The notes: generated by a model from the sequence alone, not told the origin. A stretch of DNA of 64,000 nucleotides from IMGVR_UViG_3300027736_001324:124001-188000, one strand, 5' to 3'; positions 2,776 to 63,288 are shown, counted from the first letter of the stretch. Numbers and translations: made by a program.

Positions 2776-3237
2776 ATGTCAAATTGGTATACAAGAGTAT
2801 CAGTGAATTTAGGTGTAATCCCTGATTTCATTCAGCACTTTGAATCTGAGTTAGAACAAGCAAAACGTGAAGTAAAGGTATACGGCAATGTTGAAAAGAA
2901 CATTGCTGCTATTCCTGGTGTCACCGAACATAGATTCAATCAATTACAAGAAGTAGAAGCGGTACTTAACTTGCTCAATATTAGATTAAAGAAGATTCGC
3001 CGAACTCATTTTCAAAAATATTTAGAAGCGTATAATAGAGCATTGACAAGCCGTGATGCTGAAAAGTATGCTGAAGGCGAAGATGAAGTAATTGATATGG
3101 AAGTATTGATTAATGAAGTCGCTTATCTTAGAAATCGTTGGCTTGGTATAATGAAGGGCTTAGAGGCCAAACAGTGGCAGATGGGTCATATCGTGCGGTT
3201 ACGCACAAGTGGAATGGAAGATATTACAATTGGCTAA
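2776..3237 (+). CDS. uvsY: recombination mediator UvsY-like protein
   Basis: helical 153-aa protein with KYxEGExEV and KGLEAKQWQM, resembling UvsY; position after uvsX. Confidence 0.7.
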   Translation: MSNWYTRVSVNLGVIPDFIQHFESELEQAKREVKVYGNVEKNIAAIPGVTEHRFNQLQEVEAVLNLLNIRLKKIRRTHFQKYLEAYNRALTSRDAEKYAEGEDEVIDMEVLINEVAYLRNRWLGIMKGLEAKQWQMGHIVRLRTSGMEDITIG

Positions 3238-4087
3238 TTCAAATATATTAAATCAAATCGCAGCAAGAAACCTTAAATCATCTGGTGTTATTGCCGGTGC
3301 TAACGGTAATCACCATACAATCACAATGGGTAACATTCAACCATTAACTTCACTTACACTTAGTGGATTGAATGGTACAAGTAATGATTGGGATATATTT
3401 GGTAATAAAAATGTTAAGAAATATGAGGTGTTTGAAACCACTGAGGATATTTTAGCATTGAGTGTTACTTGGCATAGGTTGCGTCCATTAATAAGTCATG
3501 GTATTAGTAACATAATAAATCCTAGTAACAGACCAACTAAACTTACTGATGAAGTTTTATTCAAAGAAATAATTCAGGAAGATAGAGATAAGGCTAATGT
3601 TATCCGTGACTATTACAGTAAGAAACTTATGATGTTTACCTTAAAAGGTCAACAACTAACTAGTTATAGAAAAGATTTGAACACATTCATCCATGGTGAT
3701 TGTAAAGTAGTTAAAGAAGAAATGATGCCATTGGTGTATCGTTTACCTGAATTCTATGAGTATGATGTTGGGCTAGATGAAATGTTTTTAGAATTAGATA
3801 CTAGATTTGAAGGATCACAAATTGCGTCATCTACAATAAAAACACTTAATCCAGTAAAGAAATTTACAGTAAAACGCAAAAGTAGAAGATTTGTAGAGTA
3901 TTGGTTGAAGGACGAAGAAAATAAACCTTACAAAATTGAAATTGATTCAAATAATGAATTGATGCACTTGTGGGATTACTTTTATGATAGGGGCAAGTTT
4001 CACGAAATAACACTTGATACTGTAATTAGATTTAGCAATAGGGATAGTATTTCCCATTATAAATTGATTAAGTGGAAATTAGCATAA
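3230..4087 (+). CDS. hypothetical protein (start probably TTG 3230; ORF track gives 3209)
   Basis: long ORF followed by a terminator. Confidence 0.7.
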   Translation: MANSNILNQIAARNLKSSGVIAGANGNHHTITMGNIQPLTSLTLSGLNGTSNDWDIFGNKNVKKYEVFETTEDILALSVTWHRLRPLISHGISNIINPSNRPTKLTDEVLFKEIIQEDRDKANVIRDYYSKKLMMFTLKGQQLTSYRKDLNTFIHGDCKVVKEEMMPLVYRLPEFYEYDVGLDEMFLELDTRFEGSQIASSTIKTLNPVKKFTVKRKSRRFVEYWLKDEENKPYKIEIDSNNELMHLWDYFYDRGKFHEITLDTVIRFSNRDSISHYKLIKWKLA

Positions 4088-6323: not shown

Positions 6324-7358
6324 ATGTCAACAATTCGCATTTTCTCTGGTTCTTATCGTAATAACCCTGTTGCTAATGAAGTGTTTACACTAGTTAAGGG
6401 TTATCAAGTTGGTAAGAAGGGTGGATTTGTTACTGTTAAAAATGACGGACAGTTTGCAATGGGTGGACCTCAGGTCCGTGTCAATGTAGAAAGCATTGAG
6501 GATATTGAATTTTTGAATGGAGAGACAGTGGCAGATAATACAGTAGAGTTTAAAGTCAAGGCAGAAGTGTCCAAAGAAACTGAAGTAGAGGCAATGGACC
6601 GCATTGCACTACGTTTCGGCATTCTTGATGAAATGGCAAGTGCTTGTATCAGCGGTGACATTCGTGCTATGATTGTGTCAGGTCCTCCCGGAGTTGGTAA
6701 GTCACATGGCGTTGAAAAGCAAATGGAAAAGTCAAGCATGTTTGACAAGATTGCCGGCAAGCGTGTTCGTTTCAATGTTGTTAAAGGTGCTATGACTGCA
6801 CTAGGTTTGTACACACAGTTGTACAAATATTCTGACACAAAAAATGTGTTGATTTTTGATGACTGCGACAGTGTGTTTGCTGATGAATTGGCTTTGAACA
6901 TTCTGAAAGCAGCATTGGATAGTGGCAAGACTCGCAAGATTTGCTGGAATAGTGACAGTCGTTTGCTACGTGAAGAAGGTATCCCGAATCAATTCAACTT
7001 TAATGGTAGTGCTATCTTTATCACTAACTTGAAGTTTGAAAACGTGAAAAGCAAGAAATTGCAAGATCACTTGGAAGCACTACAAAGTCGTTGTCACTTT
7101 CTGGACCTCACTATTAATAGTGAGCGTGACAAAATGTTGCGTATCAAGCAGGTCCATCGTGATGCTGATGGTGGGTTGTTTGTTGATTACAACTTTGAAG
7201 AAACCCAATCTACTGAAATTCTAGATTTCATGTGGGAAAATCACGGCAAACTGCGTGAAATGAGTTTGCGTATGTGTTTGAAAATTGCCGATCTAGTTAA
7301 GATCAGCCCAGCAAACTGGAAAAATCTTGCACGTACTACTTGCATGAAGAATGCTTAA
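6324..7358 (+). CDS. P-loop/AAA+ ATPase
   Basis: Walker A GPPGVGKS, Walker B LIFDDCD, FITN sensor, ALQSR arginine finger. Confidence 0.85.
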   Translation: MSTIRIFSGSYRNNPVANEVFTLVKGYQVGKKGGFVTVKNDGQFAMGGPQVRVNVESIEDIEFLNGETVADNTVEFKVKAEVSKETEVEAMDRIALRFGILDEMASACISGDIRAMIVSGPPGVGKSHGVEKQMEKSSMFDKIAGKRVRFNVVKGAMTALGLYTQLYKYSDTKNVLIFDDCDSVFADELALNILKAALDSGKTRKICWNSDSRLLREEGIPNQFNFNGSAIFITNLKFENVKSKKLQDHLEALQSRCHFLDLTINSERDKMLRIKQVHRDADGGLFVDYNFEETQSTEILDFMWENHGKLREMSLRMCLKIADLVKISPANWKNLARTTCMKNA

Positions 7359-7376
7359 TTAAAATATAAGTTTTAT

Positions 7377-7402
7377 AGGGGAACAATTGTTCCCCTTTTT
7401 TT
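7377..7402 (+). terminator. rho-independent terminator
   Basis: AGGGGAACAATTGTTCCCCT palindrome followed by a T run. Confidence 0.85.
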
Positions 7403-7453
7403 GCCTTTATGTTTGCAATTGCTAATTAGTTTATGTTATACTAAGTACTAATT

Positions 7454-8941
7454 ATGAAACAATGTAAAATAATCGTCAGGGATGAAGTCAATGTAAAGAT
7501 TGAAGGTCTAGAATTGACTGAACGTAAATCCCTAGTAAAAATGTTTGAGTACGAAGTGCCCGGTGCAAGGTATCTTCCCGCGGTCCGTCTAGGTAGATGG
7601 AATGGTAAGGTTAGTTTCTTTAGTCTCGGTGGCAGTAGTTATGTCAATCTACTACCCGAAATACTACCCTTCATAGACAGCCGAGACTATGATATTGAAC
7701 TAGAGGACCTTCGTACATATAGTACAACATTCAATTTTGTTGAAGTGTCCGAGGATACGTTCAAACACAAGAATTGGCCCGAAGGTCATCCAATTGCAGG
7801 ACAACCAGTTGTATTGCGTGACTATCAAATATCAATCATTAATGAGTTTTTAAAGAATCCACAATCACTACAAGAAATTGCTACGGGAGCAGGTAAGACA
7901 TTAATCACAGCAGCATTGAGTTGGTCTATTGAAAGTTACGGACGCAGTATTGTTATCGTCCCAAACAAAAGTCTTGTAACACAAACCGAAGCAGATTACA
8001 TTAATCTAGGATTAGATGTTGGTGTGTACTTTGGTGATAGAAAAGAATACAATAAGACGCATACAATCTGTACATGGCAAAGCCTTAACAATATGCTTAA
8101 GAAAACAAAAGCAGGTGAAGCAGAAGTTGAGATTGGTGACTTCTTAGAAGGTGTAGTTTGTGTCATGGTAGATGAGGTTCACATGGCCAAAGCCGACGCA
8201 CTAAAAGAATTGCTTACTGGCGTAATGAGTAACATCCCAATTCGTTGGGGATTGACTGGAACTATACCTAAAGAAAAATTCGCAAGTCAAGCCATCTTTA
8301 TTAGTCTTGGCAATGTTATCAACAAATTATCTGCTAGCGAATTACAAGATAGAGGGGTATTGGCACAATGTCATGTAAACATTGTACAACTACAAGATGG
8401 TGTTGAGTTTAGTAATTACCAATCTGAACTAAAACATTTACTTGAAGATGATAAACGATTAAATAAAATTACTCAATTGGTCGATGTGATTAAGAATAGT
8501 GGCAACACATTGATATTAGTTGATAGAGTAGCAGCAGGTAAAGAACTACATAATAGGTTAGCCGAACTACTACGTAATTTTAAAACAGAATATGATGTTG
8601 TATTTGTATCAGGTAATACCGGTATGGATGAACGCAAAGAACAATATGATGAGGTTGCTACAGCAACTAACAAAATCATTATCGCTACATATGGTGTAGC
8701 AGCAGTTGGTATTAACATTCCCCGAATCTTTAATCTTGTTCTTATTGAACCGGGTAAGAGTTTTGTTCGGGTAATACAAAGTATCGGTCGTGGTATTCGT
8801 AAAGCTGAAGATAAGAACTTTGTTCAGATTTGGGATATCACAAGTAATTGTAAGTTTGCAAAACGGCATCTTACACAAAGAAAAGCATTTTATAAAGAAG
8901 CAAACTATCCATTTGATGTTGAAAAACTTACATATAAATGA
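7454..8941 (+). CDS. uvsW: UvsW-like SF2 DNA helicase
   Basis: LRDYQ, ATGAGKT, DEVH, GLTGT and QSIGRGIR motifs. Confidence 0.9.
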   Translation: MKQCKIIVRDEVNVKIEGLELTERKSLVKMFEYEVPGARYLPAVRLGRWNGKVSFFSLGGSSYVNLLPEILPFIDSRDYDIELEDLRTYSTTFNFVEVSEDTFKHKNWPEGHPIAGQPVVLRDYQISIINEFLKNPQSLQEIATGAGKTLITAALSWSIESYGRSIVIVPNKSLVTQTEADYINLGLDVGVYFGDRKEYNKTHTICTWQSLNNMLKKTKAGEAEVEIGDFLEGVVCVMVDEVHMAKADALKELLTGVMSNIPIRWGLTGTIPKEKFASQAIFISLGNVINKLSASELQDRGVLAQCHVNIVQLQDGVEFSNYQSELKHLLEDDKRLNKITQLVDVIKNSGNTLILVDRVAAGKELHNRLAELLRNFKTEYDVVFVSGNTGMDERKEQYDEVATATNKIIIATYGVAAVGINIPRIFNLVLIEPGKSFVRVIQSIGRGIRKAEDKNFVQIWDITSNCKFAKRHLTQRKAFYKEANYPFDVEKLTYK

Positions 8942-8947
8942 TACAAT
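8919..8947 (+). promoter_or_regulatory. sigma70-type promoter heading the 8954-14608 operon
   Basis: TTGAAA-17 bp-TACAAT, with TG just upstream of -10; ATG 6 nt downstream. Confidence 0.55.
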
Positions 8948-8953
8948 AACACT

Positions 8954-9454
8954 ATGAGAATTTTGACCCTAGATAACGAATACTATAACTTAGAGACATT
9001 GCCAGAGGAGATAGATGATTTACGATTTGCAATATTGGACAACAGTAATCCAAGCAATGTAGATTATCATTATATACCATTAATCTTTTTAGAAAGTTTT
9101 AATGCCCCGGCACTTGTATTGAAGATTGGTAAACACACAATTAAAATGCCAGTGGATTGGCAAATATTGATTGGTGAAAAAGAGCATGGCGATTTAGAAA
9201 CATTGCCACTAACAAGTATCAATGATAGAGGATTTAATGCGTTTGAGTTTAATCCGTTAACTAGTTTTAGTCCTACCTTTCTACCTATTGAGATTGTAGA
9301 TATATACCACGATGTAACATGGTATGCTCCCCGATTAAAGAACGGGCAGTTTCTGTGTGTACCGTTGAATGATGGGCCTAAACCCGAATGTGTATATTTT
9401 GTAAAAGAAATTAGTCGTAACTGTGAGATAATAGATTATAGTCAGGCATTCTAA
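8954..9454 (+). CDS. hypothetical beta-rich protein, possibly a degenerate stand-alone Hint-like fold
   Basis: 166-aa ORF; pattern VLKIGKHTIKMPVDWQILIG ... IEIVDIYHDVTWYAPRLKNGQFLCV. Confidence 0.6.
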   Translation: MRILTLDNEYYNLETLPEEIDDLRFAILDNSNPSNVDYHYIPLIFLESFNAPALVLKIGKHTIKMPVDWQILIGEKEHGDLETLPLTSINDRGFNAFEFNPLTSFSPTFLPIEIVDIYHDVTWYAPRLKNGQFLCVPLNDGPKPECVYFVKEISRNCEIIDYSQAF

Positions 9455-10047
9455 TGGCAACAAGAAAAGTAGCAGTACCCGTTGATGAAAAATTTGACAA
9501 ACAAGATTTAGACTTGTTTGAGGTCCTTGCCGCATTAGATAAGAAAGATTATGATTTCTTTGATAGACTATCACCCGAACAACAAAAAAAGTTTGTCCCG
9601 TTTACAATGATACAATGGCTAAGTGCTATTAAAGGTAGTGAGGGATTAAGTCGTTATTATGTAATGAGTACAGCAGAGTATGCGAACAAGTATCTGTTCA
9701 ATGAGAATATTCAAAAGCATCCTAAACTACAATGGTTGATGATGTGTGCTAGTAGCCCGGGCTCAGGTAAACAATTCCATCAGTGGATACCTAACATCAG
9801 CCCTAAGGTAAGTAAATTACAAGCAGCAGCTAAACTAAAAGATATTAAAGAGTATTACAAGAAGATATATCCTAGAGCAGATAGTGATGATATTGACGCA
9901 GTAAGTGAAGCGTTTGTAGTTAATCAAAAACGCAAACTTAAATTAGCAGAATTGTTTCCTAATATGAAACTAACAGACATTGAGACATTAAATGAAACTA
10001 TTACTGAAGAACAACTTAAGCAATATGAAAGAGACCTCGGCAATTAA
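9454..10047 (+). CDS. probable clamp-loader small subunit (T4 gp62-like)
   Basis: KKFVPFTMIQWLS...ANKY...QWLM...KQFHQWI resembles the gp62 pattern; TAATG coupling. Confidence 0.5.
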   Translation: MATRKVAVPVDEKFDKQDLDLFEVLAALDKKDYDFFDRLSPEQQKKFVPFTMIQWLSAIKGSEGLSRYYVMSTAEYANKYLFNENIQKHPKLQWLMMCASSPGSGKQFHQWIPNISPKVSKLQAAAKLKDIKEYYKKIYPRADSDDIDAVSEAFVVNQKRKLKLAELFPNMKLTDIETLNETITEEQLKQYERDLGN

Positions 10048-10726
10048 GGCAGCAAAGTATGGCTGTGAATTTTGTAAGAGGGAGTTCTTGCGTGAATCAA
10101 CCACGCTTAGTCATGTATGTGAGCAGAAGCGTAGATGGTTAGATAAAGACAATCACGGCAATCGTATTGGGTTTCAATGTTGGTTGGAGTTTTATAAAAA
10201 GAATACATCAAAACGAAAGAATCTTAAGCAAGAAGATTTTATTAAGAATCCATATTACATTGCGTTTGTTAAGTTTGGTAATTATTGTGTCAACATCAAT
10301 GCGATAAATATTCCAAGATTTACTGATTGGTTATTAAAGAATCAAGTTAAGATTGACAATTGGTGTAGTGATAGTACATACACTAAATATCTAATTGAGT
10401 TTTTGAGACATGAAGATCCATTTGATGCTATACATCGTAGCATTGAAAAATGTATAGAAATGGCAAGTGACGCTAACATACAGCCACATGACTTATTGAG
10501 ATATGGCAATGCAAATAAGATTTGTTATGCGATAACAACGGGTAAGATTAGTCCATGGTTGTTGTATCAAAGCGACAGCGGGGTCCATTTCTTAGATGGA
10601 TTAAATGAAGGCCATGTTAAAATGATCATTGATTATATAAATCCAGAACAGTGGGCAATAAGGTTTAAACGTGATGCAGAACTTACGAAACGAATTAAAG
10701 ACACCCTCGGTGAAGCAGGGTACTAG
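10025..10726 (+). CDS. hypothetical protein with N-terminal zinc finger
   Basis: CEFCKREF...HVC. Confidence 0.7.
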   Translation: MKETSAIKAAKYGCEFCKREFLRESTTLSHVCEQKRRWLDKDNHGNRIGFQCWLEFYKKNTSKRKNLKQEDFIKNPYYIAFVKFGNYCVNINAINIPRFTDWLLKNQVKIDNWCSDSTYTKYLIEFLRHEDPFDAIHRSIEKCIEMASDANIQPHDLLRYGNANKICYAITTGKISPWLLYQSDSGVHFLDGLNEGHVKMIIDYINPEQWAIRFKRDAELTKRIKDTLGEAGY

Positions 10727-10907
10727 GGTTCGTATCCCTTGGATGAAAGGTGATACAATTAGTGATTGGGATGAAACTTGTATTTGGGCAATGGAACAAT
10801 TTGATTTGCCGGGTGGGAAGTTTTACACACACATGACAGAAGATTATATGGATTTTGTATTTAAAGATGAGCGTGATGCGATACATTTTAGTTTAAGATG
10901 GTTATGA
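10710..10907 (+). CDS. FxLRW-family small protein 1 (GTG start inferred)
   Basis: ends FVFKDERDAIHFSLRWL. Confidence 0.75.
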   Translation: MKQGTRVRIPWMKGDTISDWDETCIWAMEQFDLPGGKFYTHMTEDYMDFVFKDERDAIHFSLRWL

Positions 10908-11119
10908 GAAGATGGGAAGATATACGACCGGGTTGGCATGAACGTGTTATTAAACTAGATGAAAACCGCCGGCAACTGCATCGTATTGAAATAATAGATT
11001 GGGTATGTAATAAAATTGAAAATTATGAAAGGCACACATTGTGCACCTGGGATGAATTTGAAGTAAGAATAAAATTTAGATATGAACGAGACTACATTTT
11101 TTGTAGTTTAAGATGGTAA
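10904..11119 (+). CDS. FxLRW-family small protein 2
   Basis: ATGA overlap; ends IKFRYERDYIFCSLRW. Confidence 0.75.
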   Translation: MRRWEDIRPGWHERVIKLDENRRQLHRIEIIDWVCNKIENYERHTLCTWDEFEVRIKFRYERDYIFCSLRW

Positions 11120-11361
11120 CAAAAACAAAACAAGTAACTTATAAATATGTGGCCAGATTATGGGGCGCAGACTATGCCGCCCTGTTAATTTGGCTACAAA
11201 AAAATATAGGCAAATTAGTTGCCGCTAAGCCTATTGTTGCCTGGGAAGGACAAGGTTGGTATATGATATTAGTACAAGGCAACCATGGAGACCCTTATTG
11301 TGATATACATTTTGTAAATAAGAAACATTTAAAACTTTTGGAAAAAGACTGGGTTGAATGA
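11113..11361 (+). CDS. FxLRW-family small protein 3 (divergent)
   Basis: central LIWLQKNIG; ends IHFVNKKHLKLLEKDWVE. Confidence 0.65.
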   Translation: MVTKTKQVTYKYVARLWGADYAALLIWLQKNIGKLVAAKPIVAWEGQGWYMILVQGNHGDPYCDIHFVNKKHLKLLEKDWVE

Positions 11362-11660
11362 TAAAGAAACGTGCCATGGCTAACAATAGATGGGTATCTG
11401 ATTTAGCAAATCAATGGATAGATGAAATCAACGTGAAACGCCTTGAAACTGGTTATGCTGACAATCAACCTAAATGGCCCTACTGGGTTCGTCCACACAA
11501 CTACGAGGAGAAAGAGTGGTATGACATGGACAAATGGCTGCTAAACATAATGGGTGATAATAATTGGCATAAAGAAAACGCACGTTGGGTAGGCAGCAAT
11601 CGTAAGTATTGGTTCCGTGATGAAGCAGATAGAACCTTTTTCATATTGAGATGGTCATGA
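11358..11660 (+). CDS. FxLRW-family small protein 4
   Basis: ATGA overlap; ends YWFRDEADRTFFILRWS. Confidence 0.78.
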   Translation: MIKKRAMANNRWVSDLANQWIDEINVKRLETGYADNQPKWPYWVRPHNYEEKEWYDMDKWLLNIMGDNNWHKENARWVGSNRKYWFRDEADRTFFILRWS

Positions 11661-11899
11661 ACAGCAAACAGCGTAGAAAAGAAAAACGTGATATTGATAA
11701 GAATTATCACAAGGTACATCTTACAGTACGCCCAGGAATGAATTGGACTGATTGGTGTGATCAAGTTGCGGAAATGGTTAGGTGGGTTAGTGAACATACT
11801 AGGCGTGATTGTTGTTTGCAAAAAAATGAGTGGGCTGGTAGTACATTCTATTTCGTAGACGCAAAAGATGCTACACATTTTATATTGAGATGGTCATGA
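11657..11899 (+). CDS. FxLRW-family small protein 5
   Basis: ATGA overlap; ends FYFVDAKDATHFILRWS. Confidence 0.78.
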   Translation: MNSKQRRKEKRDIDKNYHKVHLTVRPGMNWTDWCDQVAEMVRWVSEHTRRDCCLQKNEWAGSTFYFVDAKDATHFILRWS

Positions 11900-12156
11900 T
11901 AGATATAGAACACGAATACATTGACAAACTTGCTAAAGATATGGCTGACAGCATTGATACAGAAGTATTGTATAATGCTATGGGTTGGACTGTTGTTAAC
12001 ATACCGCATCCATGGTACATTCCTAGTGTGCGTAATAGTGTAACAGATTGGTTAGAAGAAAATAAAATTGAATATCATGAATATCATTGTTGGGACGGCA
12101 GAATTGCTTTCAAAGAAGGTAGTGATGCTACATTTTTCATATTGAGGTGGTCATGA
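11896..12156 (+). CDS. FxLRW-family small protein 6
   Basis: ATGA overlap; ends IAFKEGSDATFFILRWS. Confidence 0.78.
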   Translation: MIDIEHEYIDKLAKDMADSIDTEVLYNAMGWTVVNIPHPWYIPSVRNSVTDWLEENKIEYHEYHCWDGRIAFKEGSDATFFILRWS

Positions 12157-12398
12157 GTAAATTTACACACAAAACAGAACGCTATTTTGGTAGCAAAGTT
12201 AATATACATACTATCTCTTGGAAGAACCAAGATGATGTTGACCCTAAAGAAATCAAGAAATGGTGTAAAAAGAATTACGGCAATTCAGGGTATGATGATG
12301 AAACTGGAAGTAATCGTTGGGTAGATAATATTAAGCAATGTGAGATAATGCTTACCCGTGACGAAGATTTAACATTGTTTTTATTGCGCTGGGAATGA
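12153..12398 (+). CDS. FxLRW-family small protein 7
   Basis: ATGA overlap; ends IMLTRDEDLTLFLLRWE. Confidence 0.78.
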   Translation: MSKFTHKTERYFGSKVNIHTISWKNQDDVDPKEIKKWCKKNYGNSGYDDETGSNRWVDNIKQCEIMLTRDEDLTLFLLRWE

Positions 12399-12598
12399 AA
12401 TCTGTAACCATCTACGGCAAAAGTGCGAATGAAGTAATAGAAATATTACATCAAATGCAAGCACACGGCTGGACTGATGGAGTAGATTTTGATTGGGCAT
12501 ATCATCGTTCTTCCACATATGATACAAGAGATCGCCGAGCAGTGTTTAATTTCTACAAAGAAGAATACAGTACTTACTTTGCATTGAGATGGGTATGA
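12395..12598 (+). CDS. FxLRW-family small protein 8
   Basis: ATGA overlap; ends FNFYKEEYSTYFALRWV. Confidence 0.78.
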   Translation: MKSVTIYGKSANEVIEILHQMQAHGWTDGVDFDWAYHRSSTYDTRDRRAVFNFYKEEYSTYFALRWV

Positions 12599-12864
12599 CC
12601 AATATATCAAAATCATTTCAAGATTATGATGACGATGATCCGGCATTACATCAACGAAAGAATCGTTGGAAGTATTGGGAAGCATTGAAAAAAGTTCGTG
12701 TAGAGTACATGGAAAACAAAACTGATTTTGACGCATATGATTTTGAAGATTATCTACAAAAGAAGTACGGTGTAAGAATGAATATTACCAATGGCAATAT
12801 AACAGATGGTTATCAGATAGTAGATGAAAAACTCTATTTAATATTTTTATTAAAATGGGGATGA
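12595..12864 (+). CDS. FxLRW-family small protein 9
   Basis: ATGA overlap; ends YQIVDEKLYLIFLLKWG. Confidence 0.75.
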   Translation: MTNISKSFQDYDDDDPALHQRKNRWKYWEALKKVRVEYMENKTDFDAYDFEDYLQKKYGVRMNITNGNITDGYQIVDEKLYLIFLLKWG

Positions 12865-12865
12865 T

Positions 12866-13138
12866 ATGGCAATAAAATACACAGAATGTTTCCATCCAGC
12901 ATATCCCAATGCCTCAGGCTCTTTATGTAAGGATAACAAATATAAAGCAGGACACAAAACAGTCTATCAAAGAGATTGTAGATATCATAAAGAGGATCCA
13001 TCTATCATTGTAAAATGGATGAGAAGAAATTTTGGTGAAAGACACCAAGGTTGGGACTTCTCTTTAGCTGGAGGATGTGTTACAATAGAGTTGTGGGATG
13101 ATAGATTTATAACAATGTATGAAATGTGGCAGATGTAA
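12866..13138 (+). CDS. FxLRW-family small protein 10 (divergent)
   Basis: central VKWMRRNFG; ends IELWDDRFITMYEMWQM. Confidence 0.7.
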   Translation: MAIKYTECFHPAYPNASGSLCKDNKYKAGHKTVYQRDCRYHKEDPSIIVKWMRRNFGERHQGWDFSLAGGCVTIELWDDRFITMYEMWQM

Positions 13139-13686
13139 TGGCAAATGATATAATGATTGATTTGGAGACACTTGACACAAGTCCATATTGTGTTATATTA
13201 ACTATAGGAGCTGTGCGGTTTGATCCTAAGGGTAATGGTGTAGTAGAACGATTAGAATTGCGTCCTACGATTGAAGAACAGACAGAAAAATATGATAGGA
13301 TAATTGATGACAGTACAATTGAATGGTGGGCAAAACAAAGCCCTGCCGCACTTGAAGAAGCGATGGGAGATGAAGGACGTGTTTCATTTAGTGAATGTAT
13401 GGAAACCCTTTATAAGTTTTGTTGGAATCGCCGTGCTGTGTGGTCTAATGGGGCTGCATTTGATATCGTTGCTTGCGAGACCGCATGGAGGCAACTTGGA
13501 GTGCGAATACCGTGGCCATTCTATACCGTACGAGATACTAGAACGTTGTATGAAGTTGCAGGAGTCAAACTAAGTGATGGCGGACATTCTACTAGTCACA
13601 AAGCAGTAGAAGATGCCGAAAGACAAGCAATTGTTGTACAAAAAGCGTATACTAAACTAATTAAAGCAGGAGTAATGGCACCATGA
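13138..13686 (+). CDS. DEDDh 3'-5' exonuclease (Rv2179c/DexA-like)
   Basis: IMIDLETL, WSNGAAFD, RDTRT and HKAVEDA motifs; TAATG coupling. Confidence 0.85.
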   Translation: MANDIMIDLETLDTSPYCVILTIGAVRFDPKGNGVVERLELRPTIEEQTEKYDRIIDDSTIEWWAKQSPAALEEAMGDEGRVSFSECMETLYKFCWNRRAVWSNGAAFDIVACETAWRQLGVRIPWPFYTVRDTRTLYEVAGVKLSDGGHSTSHKAVEDAERQAIVVQKAYTKLIKAGVMAP

Positions 13687-14000
13687 TGGTATATATTGTA
13701 GCATATAAATTTGAAACGGAAAAAGAATATGATGACTATATGCAGAATGAAGATGATTTTAAGTTGATGACTTGGTTAGTTGATAACAACATAACTGTCA
13801 TTGATGCTGAAGATTGTACTGATTTAGTAGATAATAAAGAGGTAATAGAGTTTAGTTTTAAATTTAAAAAAGACGCAAAAAAGTTTGCAAAGGCGTTTGA
13901 TTTAAAAGTAGAAGGGCCTTCCGAACGTGATTTCACTAACCCGTGGTTACCCCCCGATTGGAACGGTGACTGGGATAATCTACCGGGGTTCAGAGGATGA
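13683..14000 (+). CDS. hypothetical protein, likely a divergent 11th member of the FxLRW family
   Basis: LMTWLVDN helix and FSFKFKKDAKKFAKAF; ATGA overlaps at both ends. Confidence 0.65.
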   Translation: MMVYIVAYKFETEKEYDDYMQNEDDFKLMTWLVDNNITVIDAEDCTDLVDNKEVIEFSFKFKKDAKKFAKAFDLKVEGPSERDFTNPWLPPDWNGDWDNLPGFRG

Positions 14001-14608
14001 GAATAGATAGTGATATTGACATTGACTTTGGTTCAAGAGATAAATTGCTTGAACTGATTAAACATACAAGCGCAGCAATGCGTAATGTCAATCCTATTCG
14101 TAAACATGCTACTGGTGTATATGTTACACCTATTCCCTATGATCCAATACATGATATCGCAAGTATTGACTATACAGAAGCCGAGAAGCGTGGTTACTTC
14201 AAACTAGATTTGTTGAATGTTCATGTTTATGAGAATGTCAGAGATGAACAACATCTTAATGAATTGATGGTTGAGCCTGATTGGAGTAAACTGAAGGATA
14301 AATCTTTTGTTGAAAAACTTATTCACTTGAATAATCAGTACTACAATTTAGAGAAGATGCCAGAACCTATAGATAGTATCCCAAGATTATCTATGTTTTT
14401 AGCAGTTATTCGTCCTGGTAAAAAGCATTTGATTGGGAAATCTTGGAGTGAGATTAGTAAAACTGTATGGGATAAGGGAACTGATGGGTATGTATTCAAA
14501 CGTAGTCATAGTGTAGCCTACGCACAACTAGTAGTTGTTCACATGAATTTGTTAGGGCATTCTCTTAACGAGGGTGATGCTACGGCGTTTACTACGGCGT
14601 TTACTTAA
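13997..14608 (+). CDS. DnaE (Pol III alpha)-like mini-polymerase, C-terminal half with catalytic palm and reduced fingers
   Basis: SDIDIDF, KHATGVYV, GYFKLDLL, AVIRPG and GYVFKRSHSVAYA match DnaE PDIDIDF, KHAGGVVI, GLVKFDFL, ALxRPG and YGFNKSHSAAYA. Confidence 0.85.
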   Translation: MRIDSDIDIDFGSRDKLLELIKHTSAAMRNVNPIRKHATGVYVTPIPYDPIHDIASIDYTEAEKRGYFKLDLLNVHVYENVRDEQHLNELMVEPDWSKLKDKSFVEKLIHLNNQYYNLEKMPEPIDSIPRLSMFLAVIRPGKKHLIGKSWSEISKTVWDKGTDGYVFKRSHSVAYAQLVVVHMNLLGHSLNEGDATAFTTAFT

Positions 14609-14932
14609 TTCATTCATACTGCACGTTGGACCGTGAACCACTACTAGACTTTTGTTAGTAAAGGTCCTTAAGTAGGGTTTAAAGGGTAGCCAATCATCCT
14701 TTAAAAACAGATTGATAGGGACAAGACGATTACTTTCCCACCACCAAACTTCTCCTAATTCTAAGAACTTTTCTTTGATTGTGTTATCGGTTATAGCACC
14801 GTAATCATATATAGTGGTGACCATGTCATCACGGTTTTGAACAATACCTACATAATCTTGGTTGGCATATGAACATACTGTAATGAACGGGTGATTTTCT
14901 GTCAATCGTTTAAAGAATTCGTTTTGGATCAT
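14552..14932 (-). CDS. hypothetical protein
   Basis: 126-aa ORF with a late-type GATAAATA box on the minus strand at 14950-14957. Confidence 0.7.
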   Translation of the reverse strand: MIQNEFFKRLTENHPFITVCSYANQDYVGIVQNRDDMVTTIYDYGAITDNTIKEKFLELGEVWWWESNRLVPINLFLKDDWLPFKPYLRTFTNKSLVVVHGPTCSMNELSKRRSKRRSITLVKRMP

Positions 14933-15019
14933 TATTTTAGTTAACAGTTTATTTATCGGGTAACCAAAGTTAATTAAATTAAAATATATAGACTAAATAC
15001 GTTATAGGAGCCTACATTT

Positions 15020-15784
15020 GTGTATTCAACATCAGTATTTTATTACGTTCAGCGCAACATTGTTGTGTTATTGTCAGGCTATTCACCGAGGAAATATATG
15101 CCAGTCTATGCCAAACCATTAACCCTACATAAGGGAGTGGATAATCAAATCCAGTTTCAATTCCTGAATCAAGAGCAAAAACCCGTAGATGTTACTGGAA
15201 AAAGTATCACTTGCCGTATATTAAACTACACAGGTAATGAAATCTTAATACAGAAAGCATTGACCTTGCAGTTTGCTGCCACCGGTATTTGTGCGTTATA
15301 TTTAAATGCTGCGGACCTTGAGAATATACAGGCTCAAAAATGCTATTATACCTTAGAAATACCAGTTAATGAGTTTGACTTCCCTGTGTTTGTGGATCAA
15401 AACGCCGGCGCCCGTGGCGAGATGAATATTGTTAATAGTGTATTACCTAACTTTGTCCCATCATACAATATCACAATCCCAACTGGGCAAGCCTTTCCTA
15501 ATAGTCCTAACAGTAATGGAAGTAGCATCACTTACACTACTAGTGTACTGAGTACTAATAACAATCCAATACTAACTATCCAAACTGAGTACATTGAATT
15601 CTATGGAAACACAACTATTCAAGGTAGCAGTATTGTGGATAATGATTGGTATGATATTGTAACTACTGAGGAAGTCTCTAATGTTACACAAACGGTTGGA
15701 TATGTAATTGAAGGATTTCATCCTTATGTTCGTATGCAATTCACTAGCAATGCGGGCGCAGTAACAAATATATTGACCAGATAA
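15020..15784 (+). CDS. putative virion structural protein (Ig-like, beta-rich)
   Basis: ACTAAATA late box at 14992, AGGAG RBS, GTG start; KGVDNQIQFQFLNQEQKPVDVTG pattern. Confidence 0.65.
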   Translation: MYSTSVFYYVQRNIVVLLSGYSPRKYMPVYAKPLTLHKGVDNQIQFQFLNQEQKPVDVTGKSITCRILNYTGNEILIQKALTLQFAATGICALYLNAADLENIQAQKCYYTLEIPVNEFDFPVFVDQNAGARGEMNIVNSVLPNFVPSYNITIPTGQAFPNSPNSNGSSITYTTSVLSTNNNPILTIQTEYIEFYGNTTIQGSSIVDNDWYDIVTTEEVSNVTQTVGYVIEGFHPYVRMQFTSNAGAVTNILTR

Positions 15785-47360: not shown

Positions 47361-55751
<8,391 letters not shown>

Positions 55752-62772: not shown

Positions 62773-63288
62773 ATGAAAATTGATAATTATGGACAAATAA
62801 TTCTCACAGAAGATGATCTGTGTGATTTGTATATGAGTGATCCAGCCCGCACCATTAAAGATTGTCTTGTAGATAAGCAAATAAATCTGGACAGTACGCA
62901 CATCTTTCTCTCAGAAGAAAATCTACCTACATTAGTAGAATACATAGATAAAAAATTATCAGTTGAAGAATTTGATAAAGAAAATCAATCTCAGTGGCAA
63001 ATGCCCGTAGAATACTACGAAATGGATATTGCTAAATGGGTATTAGATCAATGTAAAAACGAAGAAGAACTGCAACGTGCAGGCAACGAATTAATAAAAT
63101 TCCATGATAGGGATATGTTCCCATTATTGAAGTATTTAAAATATCTAGTTGACACAATGCGTAGAAACAATATTGTATGGGGCGTAGGTCGTGGTAGTAG
63201 TGTAGCAAGCTATGTATTGTATTTGATTGGAATTCATCGTATAAATAGTTTGTACTACCAATTATCGGTAGATGAATTTTTAAAATAA
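62773..63288 (+). CDS. DnaE (Pol III alpha)-like mini-polymerase, N-terminal half
   Basis: R...EL..F...M..LLKY...LVD..R..NIVWGVGRGSSVASYVLYLIGIHRINSLYYQLSVDEFLK matches DnaE VGPGRGSAAGSLVAYxLGITxIDPLxYDLLFERFL. Confidence 0.85.
   Translation: MKIDNYGQIILTEDDLCDLYMSDPARTIKDCLVDKQINLDSTHIFLSEENLPTLVEYIDKKLSVEEFDKENQSQWQMPVEYYEMDIAKWVLDQCKNEEELQRAGNELIKFHDRDMFPLLKYLKYLVDTMRRNNIVWGVGRGSSVASYVLYLIGIHRINSLYYQLSVDEFLK

What the first reader, a model, noticed from the sequence alone, without database searches (positions are those of the whole stretch)
8919..14608. One coupled operon links a Hint-like protein, a gp62-like subunit, a Zn-finger protein, the paralogue array, an exonuclease and the DnaE catalytic half
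Seen: from the promoter at 8919-8947, every gene to 14608 overlaps or abuts the next (TAATG at 9454 and 13138; ATGA at 13683 and 13997), with no terminator visible. Inference: the DEDDh exonuclease may supply the proofreading that the PHP-less mini-DnaE lacks. The variable small proteins would be co-produced with this enzyme pair, so the block may be one functional system.
Basis: inference. Interest (0 to 1): 0.62.

Follow-up and report, generated by a model that had tools for sequence, protein, structure and literature searches.

The report
Jumbo-phage replication gene block with inserts
This is the tightly packed replication-gene block of an uncultured jumbo phage: an old conserved backbone (helicase, a dead intein-like protein, a zinc-finger protein, half of a split mini DNA polymerase III) into which this phage lineage has inserted a fast-changing family of small proteins and a DexA-type exonuclease, with no evidence yet that the exonuclease proofreads for the polymerase.

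Summary
No terminator was found in the block. The promoter-like site at 8919-8947 is kept in relatives in three different sequence versions.

- p166 has a Hint (intein) fold (Z 12.8) but lacks the splicing residues.
- The Zn-finger CxxC...HxC is invariant across six divergent phages.
- The exonuclease is a DEDDh enzyme of the Rv2179c/DexA family.
- The 203-aa protein is the catalytic C-half of the split minimal Pol III alpha described by Iyer et al. (2021). Its N-half lies at 62773-63288.
- 'gp62-like' is not supported.

The 'one functional system' idea is only partly supported. The old backbone, found in all lineages checked, is UvsW-Hint-p197-Znf-DnaE-C. The array and exonuclease are an insert specific to this metagenome-only clade, present in 68 of 68 informative loci. 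In 53 of these the exonuclease stop overlaps the DnaE-C start (ATGA). In five cultured lineages the exonuclease is absent or at least 43 kb away. The array has about 22 subfamilies, varies from 3 to 10 copies, and evolves fast.

Proofreading remains possible but is unsupported. No RNA data could be obtained.

The parts
7377..7396 (+). Intrinsic-terminator-like hairpin (GGGGAAC-loop-GTTCCCC plus T run) that ends the upstream unit
   Evidence: The stem and T run are kept in relatives while the loop varies.
7413..7442 (+). Promoter-like TTGCAA-18-TATACT upstream of the helicase; likely first promoter of the unit
   Evidence: conserved down to about 72% UvsW identity where this intergenic region exists.
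7454..8941 (+). UvsW-like SF2 DNA helicase (495 aa)
   Evidence: Pfam ResIII 8.4e-19, Helicase_C 1.4e-11, UvsW_N 1.6e-4. Homologues are annotated as UvsW in PAC2 and SCTP-2.
8919..8947 (+). Promoter-like TTGAAA-17-TACAAT (extended -10) ending 6 nt before the p166 ATG. A transcript from it would be leaderless or nearly so (inference).
   Evidence: Kept in three sequence versions in relatives and lost in G003.
8954..9454 (+). p166: stand-alone Hint (Hedgehog/intein) fold protein without splicing residues; the most conserved gene of the block
   Evidence: phrog_11279. AlphaFold2 pLDDT 93.3. All top PDB matches are inteins or Hint domains, Z 12.8, rmsd 2.7 A over 134 residues. Nonsynonymous/synonymous count ratio 0.17.
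9454..10047 (+). p197: conserved protein of unknown function (phrog_11758); not detectably gp62
10025..10726 (+). C2HC zinc-finger protein (233 aa from 10025; an alternative start at 9992 gives 244 aa), phrog_11058
   Evidence: C14, C17, H30 and C32 are invariant in six divergent phages. The PAC2 homologue is annotated as C2H2-type.
10671..13138 (+). Array of 10 small paralogues (54-100 aa). They are Trp-rich, share a C-terminal F-x-L-R-W motif, and are mostly linked by ATGA or ATGGTCATGA overlaps.
13138..13686 (+). DEDDh 3'-5' exonuclease of the Rv2179c/DexA family (182 aa from the ATG at 13138)
   Evidence: PF16473 6.6e-33, 114 bits. PDB 8kel exodeoxyribonuclease 7e-6; 8kel is T4 DexA by my recollection, not checked in the paper. 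D8, E10, D109, H154 and D159 are invariant in 32 relatives.
13683..14000 (+). p105: acidic small protein; an insert found in only some relatives between the exonuclease and DnaE-C
   Evidence: Marginal match to the array profile, E 0.025.
13997..14608 (+). C-terminal, catalytic half of the split minimal DNA polymerase III alpha (203 aa)
   Evidence: phrog_11778 5.8e-56. D6, D8, D10 and D71 are invariant. hhalign to E. coli DnaE residues 608-642, E 6e-4, with collinear motifs DxD, D, RPG and KSH. Iyer et al. 2021.
14552..14932 (-). Convergent conserved gene (126 aa, phrog_11637) overlapping the DnaE-C tail by 57 nt; marks the end of the + strand run
   Evidence: The same convergent partner is present in all lineages examined.
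62773..63288 (+). N-terminal (GRGS, NTP-binding) half of the split mini Pol III alpha, 48 kb downstream
   Evidence: PF07733 1.5e-8, phrog_11127 2.9e-40, hhalign to E. coli DnaE residues 349-392.

Best explanation
The window comes from a 264-kb uncultured jumbo phage of the T4-related 'group 2.2' (PA5oct / Rak2 / Atu_ph07 kind). The flagged block is the centre of its replication-recombination module.

One run of + strand genes is probably transcribed from two sigma-70-like promoters, one upstream of the UvsW-like helicase and one just before p166. The genes are translated by stop/start coupling.

The run has two layers.

Layer 1 is an ancient backbone kept in every lineage examined:
- UvsW helicase;
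- p166, a stand-alone and catalytically dead Hint-fold protein;
- p197;
- a C2HC zinc-finger protein;
- the catalytic C-half of the split minimal Pol III alpha;
- then a convergent small gene, p254, primase and DnaB.

Layer 2 fills the gap between the zinc-finger gene and DnaE-C, which is a hot spot for insertion. In this metagenome-only clade the gap holds a fast-evolving family of small alpha/beta proteins, with about 22 subfamilies and 3-10 copies per complete interval in largely the same order. It also holds a DexA/Rv2179c-family DEDDh exonuclease that has become fixed next to DnaE-C.

Co-expression of all these genes is likely (inferred). Physical or functional coupling of the exonuclease to the mini polymerase is not shown. 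The exonuclease most likely does a DexA-like job (3'-5' degradation of DNA ends for nucleotide salvage, recombination or homing) timed with replication. The small paralogues are most likely accessory host-interaction proteins rather than parts of the polymerase (inferred from their variability only).
For: - Gene identities.
- Known class: Iyer et al. 2021 (PMC7824862) describe the split minimal Pol III alpha of group 2.2 phages with its halves at distant genes. The N-half is found here at 62773-63288, and a family B polymerase at about 212-214 kb of the genome.
- Backbone synteny in PAC2, Phosso, Atu_ph07, GAP32 and SCTP-2.
- Insert layer: the order UvsW-p166-p197-Znf-array-exo-(p105)-DnaE-C is kept in the 80 IMG/VR loci as far as each reaches, and in two more distant genomes with 67% and 72% DnaE-C identity.
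- The exonuclease is upstream of DnaE-C in 68 of 68 informative loci, with an ATGA overlap in 53.
- Array subfamilies show presence/absence variation in largely collinear order. The interval is 1.1-5.8 kb long and in some relatives carries radical-SAM genes.
- Array genes are coding but fast-evolving: third-position changes dominate, with nonsynonymous/synonymous count ratios of 0.5-2.0 against 0.17-0.8 for backbone genes.
- There are no array copies elsewhere in the genome.
- Promoter and terminator conservation.
Against: - Operon structure, promoter use and the 3' end are therefore inferred.
- The perfect retention of the exonuclease, and its 4-nt overlap with DnaE-C across the clade while neighbours come and go, fits a real functional tie better than a random passenger would.
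- GAP32 carries a different DEDDh exonuclease (DnaQ/RNase_T type) in the same cluster, just upstream of UvsW. This could mean that the cluster repeatedly recruits exonucleases.
- The function of the array is a guess from its variability. Its predicted fold is a generic ferredoxin-like sandwich (best Z 7.1).
Confidence: 0.6

Rival explanations
1. The DEDDh exonuclease is the trans-acting proofreader of the PHP-less split mini Pol III alpha, an alpha-epsilon-like pair. It is made in fixed ratio with the catalytic half through translational coupling.
For: - The exonuclease is adjacent to DnaE-C in 68 of 68 clade loci, with an ATGA overlap in 53. The adjacency holds down to 67% DnaE-C identity.
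- The DEDDh residues are invariant.
- The two polymerase halves are too small to hold a full PHP or exonuclease domain. The N-half aligns only to about E. coli alpha residues 246-394.
- GAP32 has a DnaQ-type exonuclease in the same cluster.
- Iyer et al. note that group 1 jumbo phages also rely on a separately encoded exonuclease.
Against: - The exonuclease family is absent from PAC2, Atu_ph07 and SCTP-2, and lies 107 kb (Phosso) and 43 kb (GAP32) from DnaE-C. The mini polymerase therefore does not generally need it.
- The family occurs in 559 phage records. Only 96 records in the collection carry DnaE-C, and none of the 60 exonuclease rows listed is one of the jumbo phages found with DnaE-C; the overlap of the two full sets was not computed.
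- It is not a DnaQ/RNase_T family member.
- The phage has a family B polymerase, a type that normally carries its own exonuclease domain (general knowledge).
Confidence: 0.15
2. The functional unit is the conserved backbone only. The dead Hint protein p166, p197 and the zinc-finger protein would be accessory or assembly subunits of the split mini Pol III or of UvsW. The array and exonuclease would be unrelated cargo.
For: - UvsW-p166-p197-Znf-DnaE-C synteny survives between lineages with only 40-48% DnaE-C identity.
- p166 is under the strongest constraint in the block.
- Inteins are typically found in replication proteins, so a domesticated Hint domain here is plausible (general knowledge).
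Against: - Conserved order in T4-like replication modules can persist without physical interaction.
- No interaction test was run for these proteins.
- In Phosso about 3.6 kb of other genes separates p166 from p197. In SCTP-2 several genes separate Znf from DnaE-C.
Confidence: 0.2
3. The block is not one operon. Internal promoters (for example the sigma-70-like sites at 13126-13154 and 13172-13199) and cryptic terminators would split it into separately regulated units.
For: - Twenty + strand sigma-70-like matches lie inside the block, including an 11-of-12 match at 13172-13199.
- PA5oct, a relative, shows mixed temporal transcription across its genome (PMC7318152).
Against: - The number of promoter-like sites does not exceed shuffled controls.
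- All internal sites lie in coding sequence, so their conservation cannot be told apart from protein constraint.
- There is no intergenic space and no terminator-like hairpin with a proper T run inside the block.
Confidence: 0.2

Closest known systems
Split minimal DNA polymerase III alpha of group 2.2 jumbo phages (Iyer, Anantharaman, Krishnan, Burroughs, Aravind 2021, Viruses 13:63)
   Same: - There are two stand-alone proteins at distant genes: an N-half with the GRGS motif and a C-half with the DxD, D and KSH motifs.
- There are no other Pol III domains.
- It co-occurs with a family B polymerase, UvsW, UvsX/UvsY, a gp32-like SSB and DnaB.
   Different: In this clade a DexA-family exonuclease gene is translationally coupled to the C-half gene, and a multigene array lies just upstream. 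I found neither feature, nor the Hint-fold neighbour, in that paper.
T4 DexA / Mycobacterium Rv2179c family of DEDDh 3'-5' exonucleases (PF16473; PDB 8kel)
   Same: - The Pfam match is far above its cut-off.
- The DEDDh residues are invariant.
- The size is similar (182 aa).
- The N-terminal 80 residues align to the 8kel exodeoxyribonuclease at E 7e-6.
   Different: - The best phage relatives are siphovirus exonucleases at 33-35% identity, not T4 DexA at 24-28%.
- Its position directly upstream of a polymerase gene is not the T4 arrangement.
E. coli Pol III core alpha-epsilon (DnaE-DnaQ)
   Same: A Pol III-type catalytic module without its own exonuclease sits next to a separately encoded DEDDh exonuclease.
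   Different: - The exonuclease belongs to another family (PF16473, not PF00929).
- The PHP domain that binds epsilon in E. coli (general knowledge) is largely missing.
- The pairing is not conserved across related phages.
Mini-inteins and Hedgehog/BIL Hint domains (for example Ssp and Npu DnaE inteins, PDB 1zd7 and 4kl5)
   Same: p166 has the complete Hint fold: Z 12.8, rmsd 2.7 A, 134 aligned residues, model residues 1-151.
   Different: - It is a free-standing ORF with no exteins.
- It starts Met-Arg instead of Cys/Ser.
- It has P66-x-x-W69 where block B T-x-x-H would be expected (inferred from linear position).
- It has no terminal His-Asn.
It cannot be a splicing intein.
Hyperplastic regions with small-gene families between conserved modules of T4-like phage genomes (PMC2993671 came up but was not read; this comparison is from general knowledge)
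   Same: Variable numbers of small, fast-evolving, tightly overlapping ORFs lie between conserved core genes.
   Different: Here the small genes belong to one recognisable family (C-terminal F-x-L-R-W motif, about 22 subfamilies) arranged in a largely collinear order across relatives.

Membership tests
Split minimal Pol III alpha, C-terminal (catalytic) half | Mg2+-binding acidic residues (DxD plus a third Asp) of the Pol-beta-like palm | tested here: met
   D6, D8, D10 and D71 are invariant in 7 divergent and 48 close homologues. They are collinear with E. coli D401, D403, D405 and D555. The catalytic role of those E. coli residues is from general knowledge.
Split minimal Pol III alpha, C-terminal (catalytic) half | Detectable homology to DnaE beyond the acidic motif | tested here: met
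   hhalign aligns residues 108-142 with E. coli alpha 608-642, E 6e-4 but probability only 29%. The RPG and KSH motifs are collinear. phrog_11778 'DNA polymerase' 5.8e-56. HMM searches of the PDB and Pfam found nothing.
Split minimal Pol III alpha, C-terminal (catalytic) half | A separate N-terminal NTP-binding half encoded elsewhere in the same genome | tested here: met
   Window 62773-63288: PF07733 at 35 bits against a cut-off of 23.9, a GRGS motif, ending at the equivalent of E. coli residue 392.
Split minimal Pol III alpha, C-terminal (catalytic) half | DNA polymerase activity of the reconstituted halves | not testable with these tools
   This needs biochemistry.
Rv2179c/DexA-like DEDDh exonuclease (PF16473) | Family profile match above the curated cut-off | tested here: met
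   114.3 bits against a cut-off of 27, covering profile positions 1-175 of 177.
Rv2179c/DexA-like DEDDh exonuclease (PF16473) | DEDDh catalytic residues present and conserved | tested here: met
   D8, E10, D109, H154 and D159 are invariant in 32 relatives. Assignment of these residues to the motif is by pattern.
Pol III epsilon-type proofreading subunit (DnaQ, PF00929) | Membership of the RNase_T/DnaQ family | tested here: not met
   Only PF16473 matches the protein. There is no PF00929 match anywhere in the 264-kb record, which is 69% complete.
Pol III epsilon-type proofreading subunit (DnaQ, PF00929) | Co-occurrence and linkage with the polymerase across related genomes | tested here: not met
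   It is linked in 68 of 68 loci of this clade. It is absent or 43-107 kb away in five other lineages.
Pol III epsilon-type proofreading subunit (DnaQ, PF00929) | Physical binding to the polymerase and mismatch excision | not testable with these tools
   This needs pull-down and fidelity assays.
Hint (Hedgehog/intein) superfamily, for p166 | Hint fold | tested here: met
   The model has pLDDT 93.3. 74 PDB chains score Z of 8 or more, and every row shown is an intein, Hedgehog or BIL domain, best Z 12.8.
Intein (self-splicing Hint) | N-terminal Cys/Ser nucleophile, block B TxxH, C-terminal His-Asn and flanking exteins | tested here: not met
   It is a stand-alone ORF starting Met-Arg. The conserved residues are L4, N8, D37, P66, N100, P101, W123, P126, P137 and C146. 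There is no TxxH and no terminal HN. Block positions were judged from linear order, not from a residue-level structural alignment.
T4 gp62 clamp-loader small subunit, for p197 | Sequence or profile similarity to gp62 | tested here: not met
   hhalign probability 0.07%. No gp62 chain appears in the PDB profile search. p197 is in phrog_11758 and T4 gp62 in phrog_225. There is no phrog_225 match in the genome.
T4 gp62 clamp-loader small subunit, for p197 | Gene next to the gp44-like large subunit | tested here: not met
   The gp44-like gene (phrog_168, 1.4e-69) lies at G000 188351-189277, about 55 kb from p197.
T4 gp62 clamp-loader small subunit, for p197 | gp62-like fold | not tested
Single operon | Same strand, no intergenic gaps, promoter upstream, no internal terminator | tested here: met
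   This is sequence-level evidence only.
Single operon | One transcript covering all genes | not testable with these tools

The most novel reading that the evidence does not exclude
In this abundant uncultured jumbo-phage clade, the split minimal Pol III alpha has acquired a dedicated trans-proofreader from the DexA/Rv2179c family, translationally coupled to the catalytic half. The conserved dead Hint protein (a domesticated intein), p197 and the zinc-finger protein would then be assembly or accessory subunits of this minimal polymerase. Together they would form a previously unknown minimal replicase or repair holoenzyme.
Probability: 0.1. Interest if true: 0.75.

Novelty: new variant of a known kind. 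Interest (0 to 1): 0.45.

Why it matters
The split minimal Pol III alpha of jumbo phages has been proposed as a model of an ancestral replicase. Nothing is known about its partners or its role. This locus adds three testable leads.

1. A clade where a DEDDh exonuclease gene is fixed and stop/start-coupled to the catalytic half. This is the best natural candidate for testing whether the mini enzyme works with a proofreader in trans.
2. A stand-alone, strongly conserved, catalytically dead Hint-fold protein that sits in the same cluster in all lineages. I did not find it described in the papers searched. It may be a domesticated intein.
3. A one-family array of small proteins whose copy content differs between near-identical phages. 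This is the pattern expected of host-interaction or counter-defence genes.

If none of these links holds, the block is an ordinary, tightly packed phage replication module with a variable insert.

Tried and rejected
- Co-fold of N-half, C-half and exonuclease. The result was 'no answer', below the mark and with controls not run. I do not use it as evidence either way.
- Sequencing-run search for RNA evidence.
- megablast of the block against cultured phages found no match. tblastn of one array member also found no match.
- Profile and sequence searches of the PDB with the C-half, p166, p197 and the AAA+ protein upstream of UvsW gave no meaningful hits.
- Protein-atlas look-up of p166 returned only unnamed viral clusters.
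- The word-indexed homologue search for p166 found 4599 hits, but the 120 listed were all 85% identical or more and too shallow for folding. The exhaustive representative search supplied the deep alignment instead.
- Array fold searches found only a generic ferredoxin-like/ACT/RRM-like sandwich (best Z 7.1), weak matches to unnamed viral proteins and three weak matches to Atu_ph07 proteins. No function can be drawn from these.
- The T4 late-promoter motif TATAAATA is not enriched: 4 found against about 10 expected.
- An Rfam scan of 7000-15200 found nothing.
- UvsW and p166 as one read-through protein. They are in frame, separated by TGA plus four codons. I rejected the idea because the frame relation is not kept in PAC2 or Phosso.
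- The array as RiPP precursors. This was prompted by radical-SAM genes in the same interval of some relatives. It is not supported: the window has no such enzyme, the members are predicted to fold, and the conserved part is C-terminal.
- The 292-aa protein at 3209-4087 as a counterpart of the GAP32 DnaQ-like exonuclease showed no similarity.

Full report
WHAT THE WINDOW IS. The window is bases 124001-188000 of a 263.7-kb IMG/VR virus record that is estimated to be 69% complete. It has no near-identical cultured relative. Its proteins place it among the T4-related 'group 2.2' jumbo phages. The 203-aa protein at 13997-14608 matches 96 cultured phages at 38-48% identity, including PA5oct-like Pseudomonas phages, Atu_ph07, Phosso, Rak2/GAP32-like phages and SCTP-2. 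IMG/VR holds 459 environmental relatives.

The genes upstream are a gp32-like SSB, UvsX, UvsY and an AAA+ protein. Downstream lie a primase and a DnaB helicase. The flagged block is therefore the middle of a replication-recombination module.

THE OBSERVATION. The + strand genes are:
- UvsW-like helicase, 7454-8941
- p166, 8954-9454
- p197, 9454-10047
- Zn-finger protein, 10025-10726
- ten small paralogues, 10671-13138
- exonuclease, 13138-13686
- p105, 13683-14000
- DnaE-C, 13997-14608

The other junctions are overlaps of 1-23 nt or gaps of at most 16 nt. Seven of the nine junctions inside the array can be read as ATGA overlaps, five of them within the 10-nt overlap ATGGTCATGA or a close variant.

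No terminator-like hairpin with a proper T run lies inside the block. The site at 8919-8947 is a 10-of-12 sigma-70 match with an extended -10. Such matches are not more frequent here than in shuffled sequence (47 against 43.9). The site is nevertheless kept in relatives in three different sequence versions, each with a 17-nt spacer and a -10 ending 6 nt before the p166 ATG. Examples are TTGACT-17-TATAAT in L062/L067 and TTGACA-17-TATATT in the 333-kb genome G002. One relative, G003, lacks it. I infer that such a promoter would give a leaderless or nearly leaderless p166 message.

A clearer boundary lies upstream of UvsW. It is a hairpin at 7377-7396 whose stem and T run are conserved while its loop varies, followed by TTGCAA-18-TATACT at 7413-7442. 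Nothing terminator-like separates UvsW from p166. The unit therefore probably has two promoters and includes the helicase.

Its 3' end is undefined. A conserved minus-strand gene (14552-14932) converges on DnaE-C and overlaps it by 57 nt. The next + strand genes (p254, primase, DnaB) follow without a terminator in the scan.

THE GENES.

DnaE-C. It belongs to phrog_11778 'DNA polymerase'. Its invariant D6-x-D8-x-D10-F, K-x-D71, R-P-G and K/R-S-H motifs are collinear with E. coli DnaE D401-x-D403, D555, R-P-G 639-641 and K-S-H 758-760. hhalign aligns residues 108-142 with E. coli alpha 608-642 at E 6e-4, though with a probability of only 29%.

The partner N-half is at 62773-63288. It matches PF07733 above its cut-off, carries a GRGS motif, and aligns to E. 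coli residues 349-392. It ends at the equivalent of E. coli residue 392, just short of the acidic motif (E. coli 401) near the start of the C-half. This is the split minimal Pol III alpha that Iyer et al. described for group 2.2 phages, with halves at distant genes and with a family B polymerase alongside. The family B polymerase is found here at about 212-214 kb.

Exonuclease. It matches PF16473 (Rv2179c-like) at 114 bits. Its closest solved relative is the 8kel exodeoxyribonuclease, which I take from memory to be T4 DexA. Its DEDDh residues are invariant in 32 relatives. It is not a DnaQ/RNase_T protein, and the genome has no match to that family.

p166. No sequence method named it. With a deep alignment from the exhaustive search, AlphaFold2 gave pLDDT 93.3. 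Every top PDB match is an intein, Hedgehog or BIL Hint domain, with best Z 12.8, rmsd 2.7 A and 134 aligned residues over model residues 1-151.

It is a free-standing ORF that starts Met-Arg. It has P-x-x-W where T-x-x-H would be expected and has no terminal His-Asn. It therefore has the Hint fold but cannot splice (block positions were judged from linear order). It is the most constrained gene of the block, with a nonsynonymous/synonymous count ratio of 0.17.

Zn-finger protein. C14, C17, H30 and C32 are invariant in six phages that share only 27-33% identity.

p197. I found no support for 'gp62-like':
- hhalign probability to T4 gp62 is 0.07%.
- It belongs to a different PHROG from T4 gp62.
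- There is no phrog_225 match in the genome.
- The gp44-like clamp loader lies about 55 kb away, about 1 kb beyond the DnaE N-half.
Its fold was not tested.

The array. The ten members share 13-30% identity and a C-terminal F-x-L-R-W motif. The genome holds no other copies. In 80 related loci I found 254 distinct members falling into about 22 subfamilies. Each window member belongs to a different subfamily. Relatives carry subsets of 3-10 in largely the same order, for example CEIDHJGFAB here and CEDGA, CKEA or EDB elsewhere.

Third-position changes dominate, so these are real genes. They evolve faster than the backbone, with ratios of 0.5-2.0. One member modelled with 94 sequences gives a helix followed by a beta-alpha-beta-beta-alpha sandwich (pLDDT 74.8). 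It has only generic ferredoxin-like matches (best Z 7.1) and weak matches to unnamed viral proteins, three of them from Atu_ph07. p105 is a marginal relative (E 0.025) and is present in only some loci.

LINKAGE ACROSS RELATIVES. The 80 IMG/VR loci have 78-100% DnaE-C identity. As far as each locus reaches, they keep the order UvsW-p166-p197-Znf-array-exo-(p105)-DnaE-C-(minus gene)-p254-primase-DnaB. Two more distant genomes, with 67% and 72% DnaE-C identity, keep the same order with fewer array members.

The exonuclease lies upstream of DnaE-C in 68 of 68 loci with enough flank. In 53 of these its stop overlaps the DnaE-C start by ATGA. In the other 15, including the window, a 0.2-0.9 kb insert such as p105 intervenes.

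Five cultured lineages (40-48% DnaE-C identity) keep the backbone UvsW-p166-p197-Znf-DnaE-C. None has the array. Between Znf and DnaE-C they have nothing (PAC2) or unrelated genes. The PF16473 family in these lineages is as follows:

| Phage | PF16473 exonuclease |
|---|---|
| PAC2 | absent |
| Atu_ph07 | absent |
| SCTP-2 | absent |
| Phosso | 107 kb from DnaE-C |
| GAP32 | 43 kb from DnaE-C |

The family is present in 559 phage records. Only 96 records in the collection carry DnaE-C, and none of the 60 exonuclease rows listed is one of those jumbo phages.

The Znf-exonuclease interval ranges from 1.1 to 5.8 kb. In some relatives it holds radical-SAM genes. It is a hot spot for insertion.

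INTERPRETATION. Shown:
- tight packing and stop/start overlap;
- conserved promoter-like and terminator-like elements;
- the gene identities above;
- an ancient backbone plus a clade-specific insert;
- stable exonuclease-DnaE-C adjacency within the clade.

Inferred:
- co-transcription and translational coupling;
- an accessory, host-interaction role for the array, based on its variability alone.

The proofreading hypothesis remains open at roughly 15%. The fixed, overlapping arrangement and the lack of an exonuclease in the mini polymerase speak for it. The absence or unlinked position of the family in other lineages, and its known biology, speak against it. The co-fold job gave no verdict and is not used.

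NOVELTY. The split mini Pol III alpha and its genomic context class are known (Iyer et al. 2021). New here, as far as the papers I could search show:
- the stand-alone dead Hint protein conserved in the cluster;
- the one-family small-protein array;
- the exonuclease coupled to DnaE-C in an abundant uncultured clade.
I rate this a new variant of a known kind, with interest 0.45.

LIMITS.
- The genome is 69% complete.
- There are no transcript data.
- There are no residue-level structural alignments.
- Only five distant lineages were examined for linkage.
- The functions of p197, the zinc-finger protein and the array remain unknown.

Noticed in passing
window 62773-63288 and G000 188351-189277 (L124:1267-2193): The N-half of the split mini Pol III alpha lies about 1 kb upstream of the gp44-like clamp-loader gene (phrog_168, 1.4e-69), which is just beyond the window end. 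The two polymerase halves thus sit in two different replication gene clusters, one with UvsW/primase/DnaB and one with the clamp loader.
   Followed up: partly
L056:2767-3996, L060:3502-4731, L066:1808-3064, L066:3516-5057, L066:5059-6606: In some relatives the variable interval between the Zn-finger gene and the exonuclease carries one to three radical-SAM genes, two of them with a B12-binding domain, interleaved with array members. The window has none. L060 was not scanned; I take it to be the same gene as in L056 from its identical length (409 aa).
   Followed up: partly
window 7377-7396: The terminator hairpin upstream of UvsW keeps its GGGGAAC/GTTCCCC stem and T run in relatives while the loop sequence changes. 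This is good comparative evidence for a real terminator.
   Followed up: yes
window 14552-14608: DnaE-C and the minus-strand gene 14552-14932 (phrog_11637) converge and overlap by 57 nt. The same convergent pair, overlapping by 4-17 nt, is present in PAC2, Phosso, Atu_ph07, GAP32 and SCTP-2. Some clade members have a shorter DnaE-C tail (187-195 aa).
   Followed up: partly
window 8939-8956: UvsW and p166 are in the same reading frame, separated only by TGA and four codons. The relation is not kept in PAC2 or Phosso, so it is probably a coincidence.
   Followed up: yes
L085:3726-4571 (GAP32_275): Cronobacter phage GAP32 encodes a DnaQ/RNase_T-type DEDDh exonuclease (PF00929, 1.1e-21) immediately upstream of its UvsW gene, in the same cluster as its DnaE-C half. 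It is a different exonuclease family from the one in the window's cluster.
   Followed up: partly
window 47361-55751: A single 2796-aa ORF has a G+C content of about 0.47-0.53, against about 0.37 for the rest of the window.
   Followed up: no
window 8954 and 7454: The -10 elements of both conserved promoter-like sites end only 6 and 11 nt before the start codons, and no Shine-Dalgarno motif precedes either gene. Only 17 of 51 long + strand ORFs in the window have an SD-like motif upstream. This suggests leaderless or short-leader messages.
   Followed up: partly
window 10671-13138: The conserved C-terminal L-R-W of the array proteins is often encoded as TTG AGA TGG, which also contains the ATG of the next gene. 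Protein constraint and start-codon constraint are therefore entangled at these junctions.
   Followed up: no
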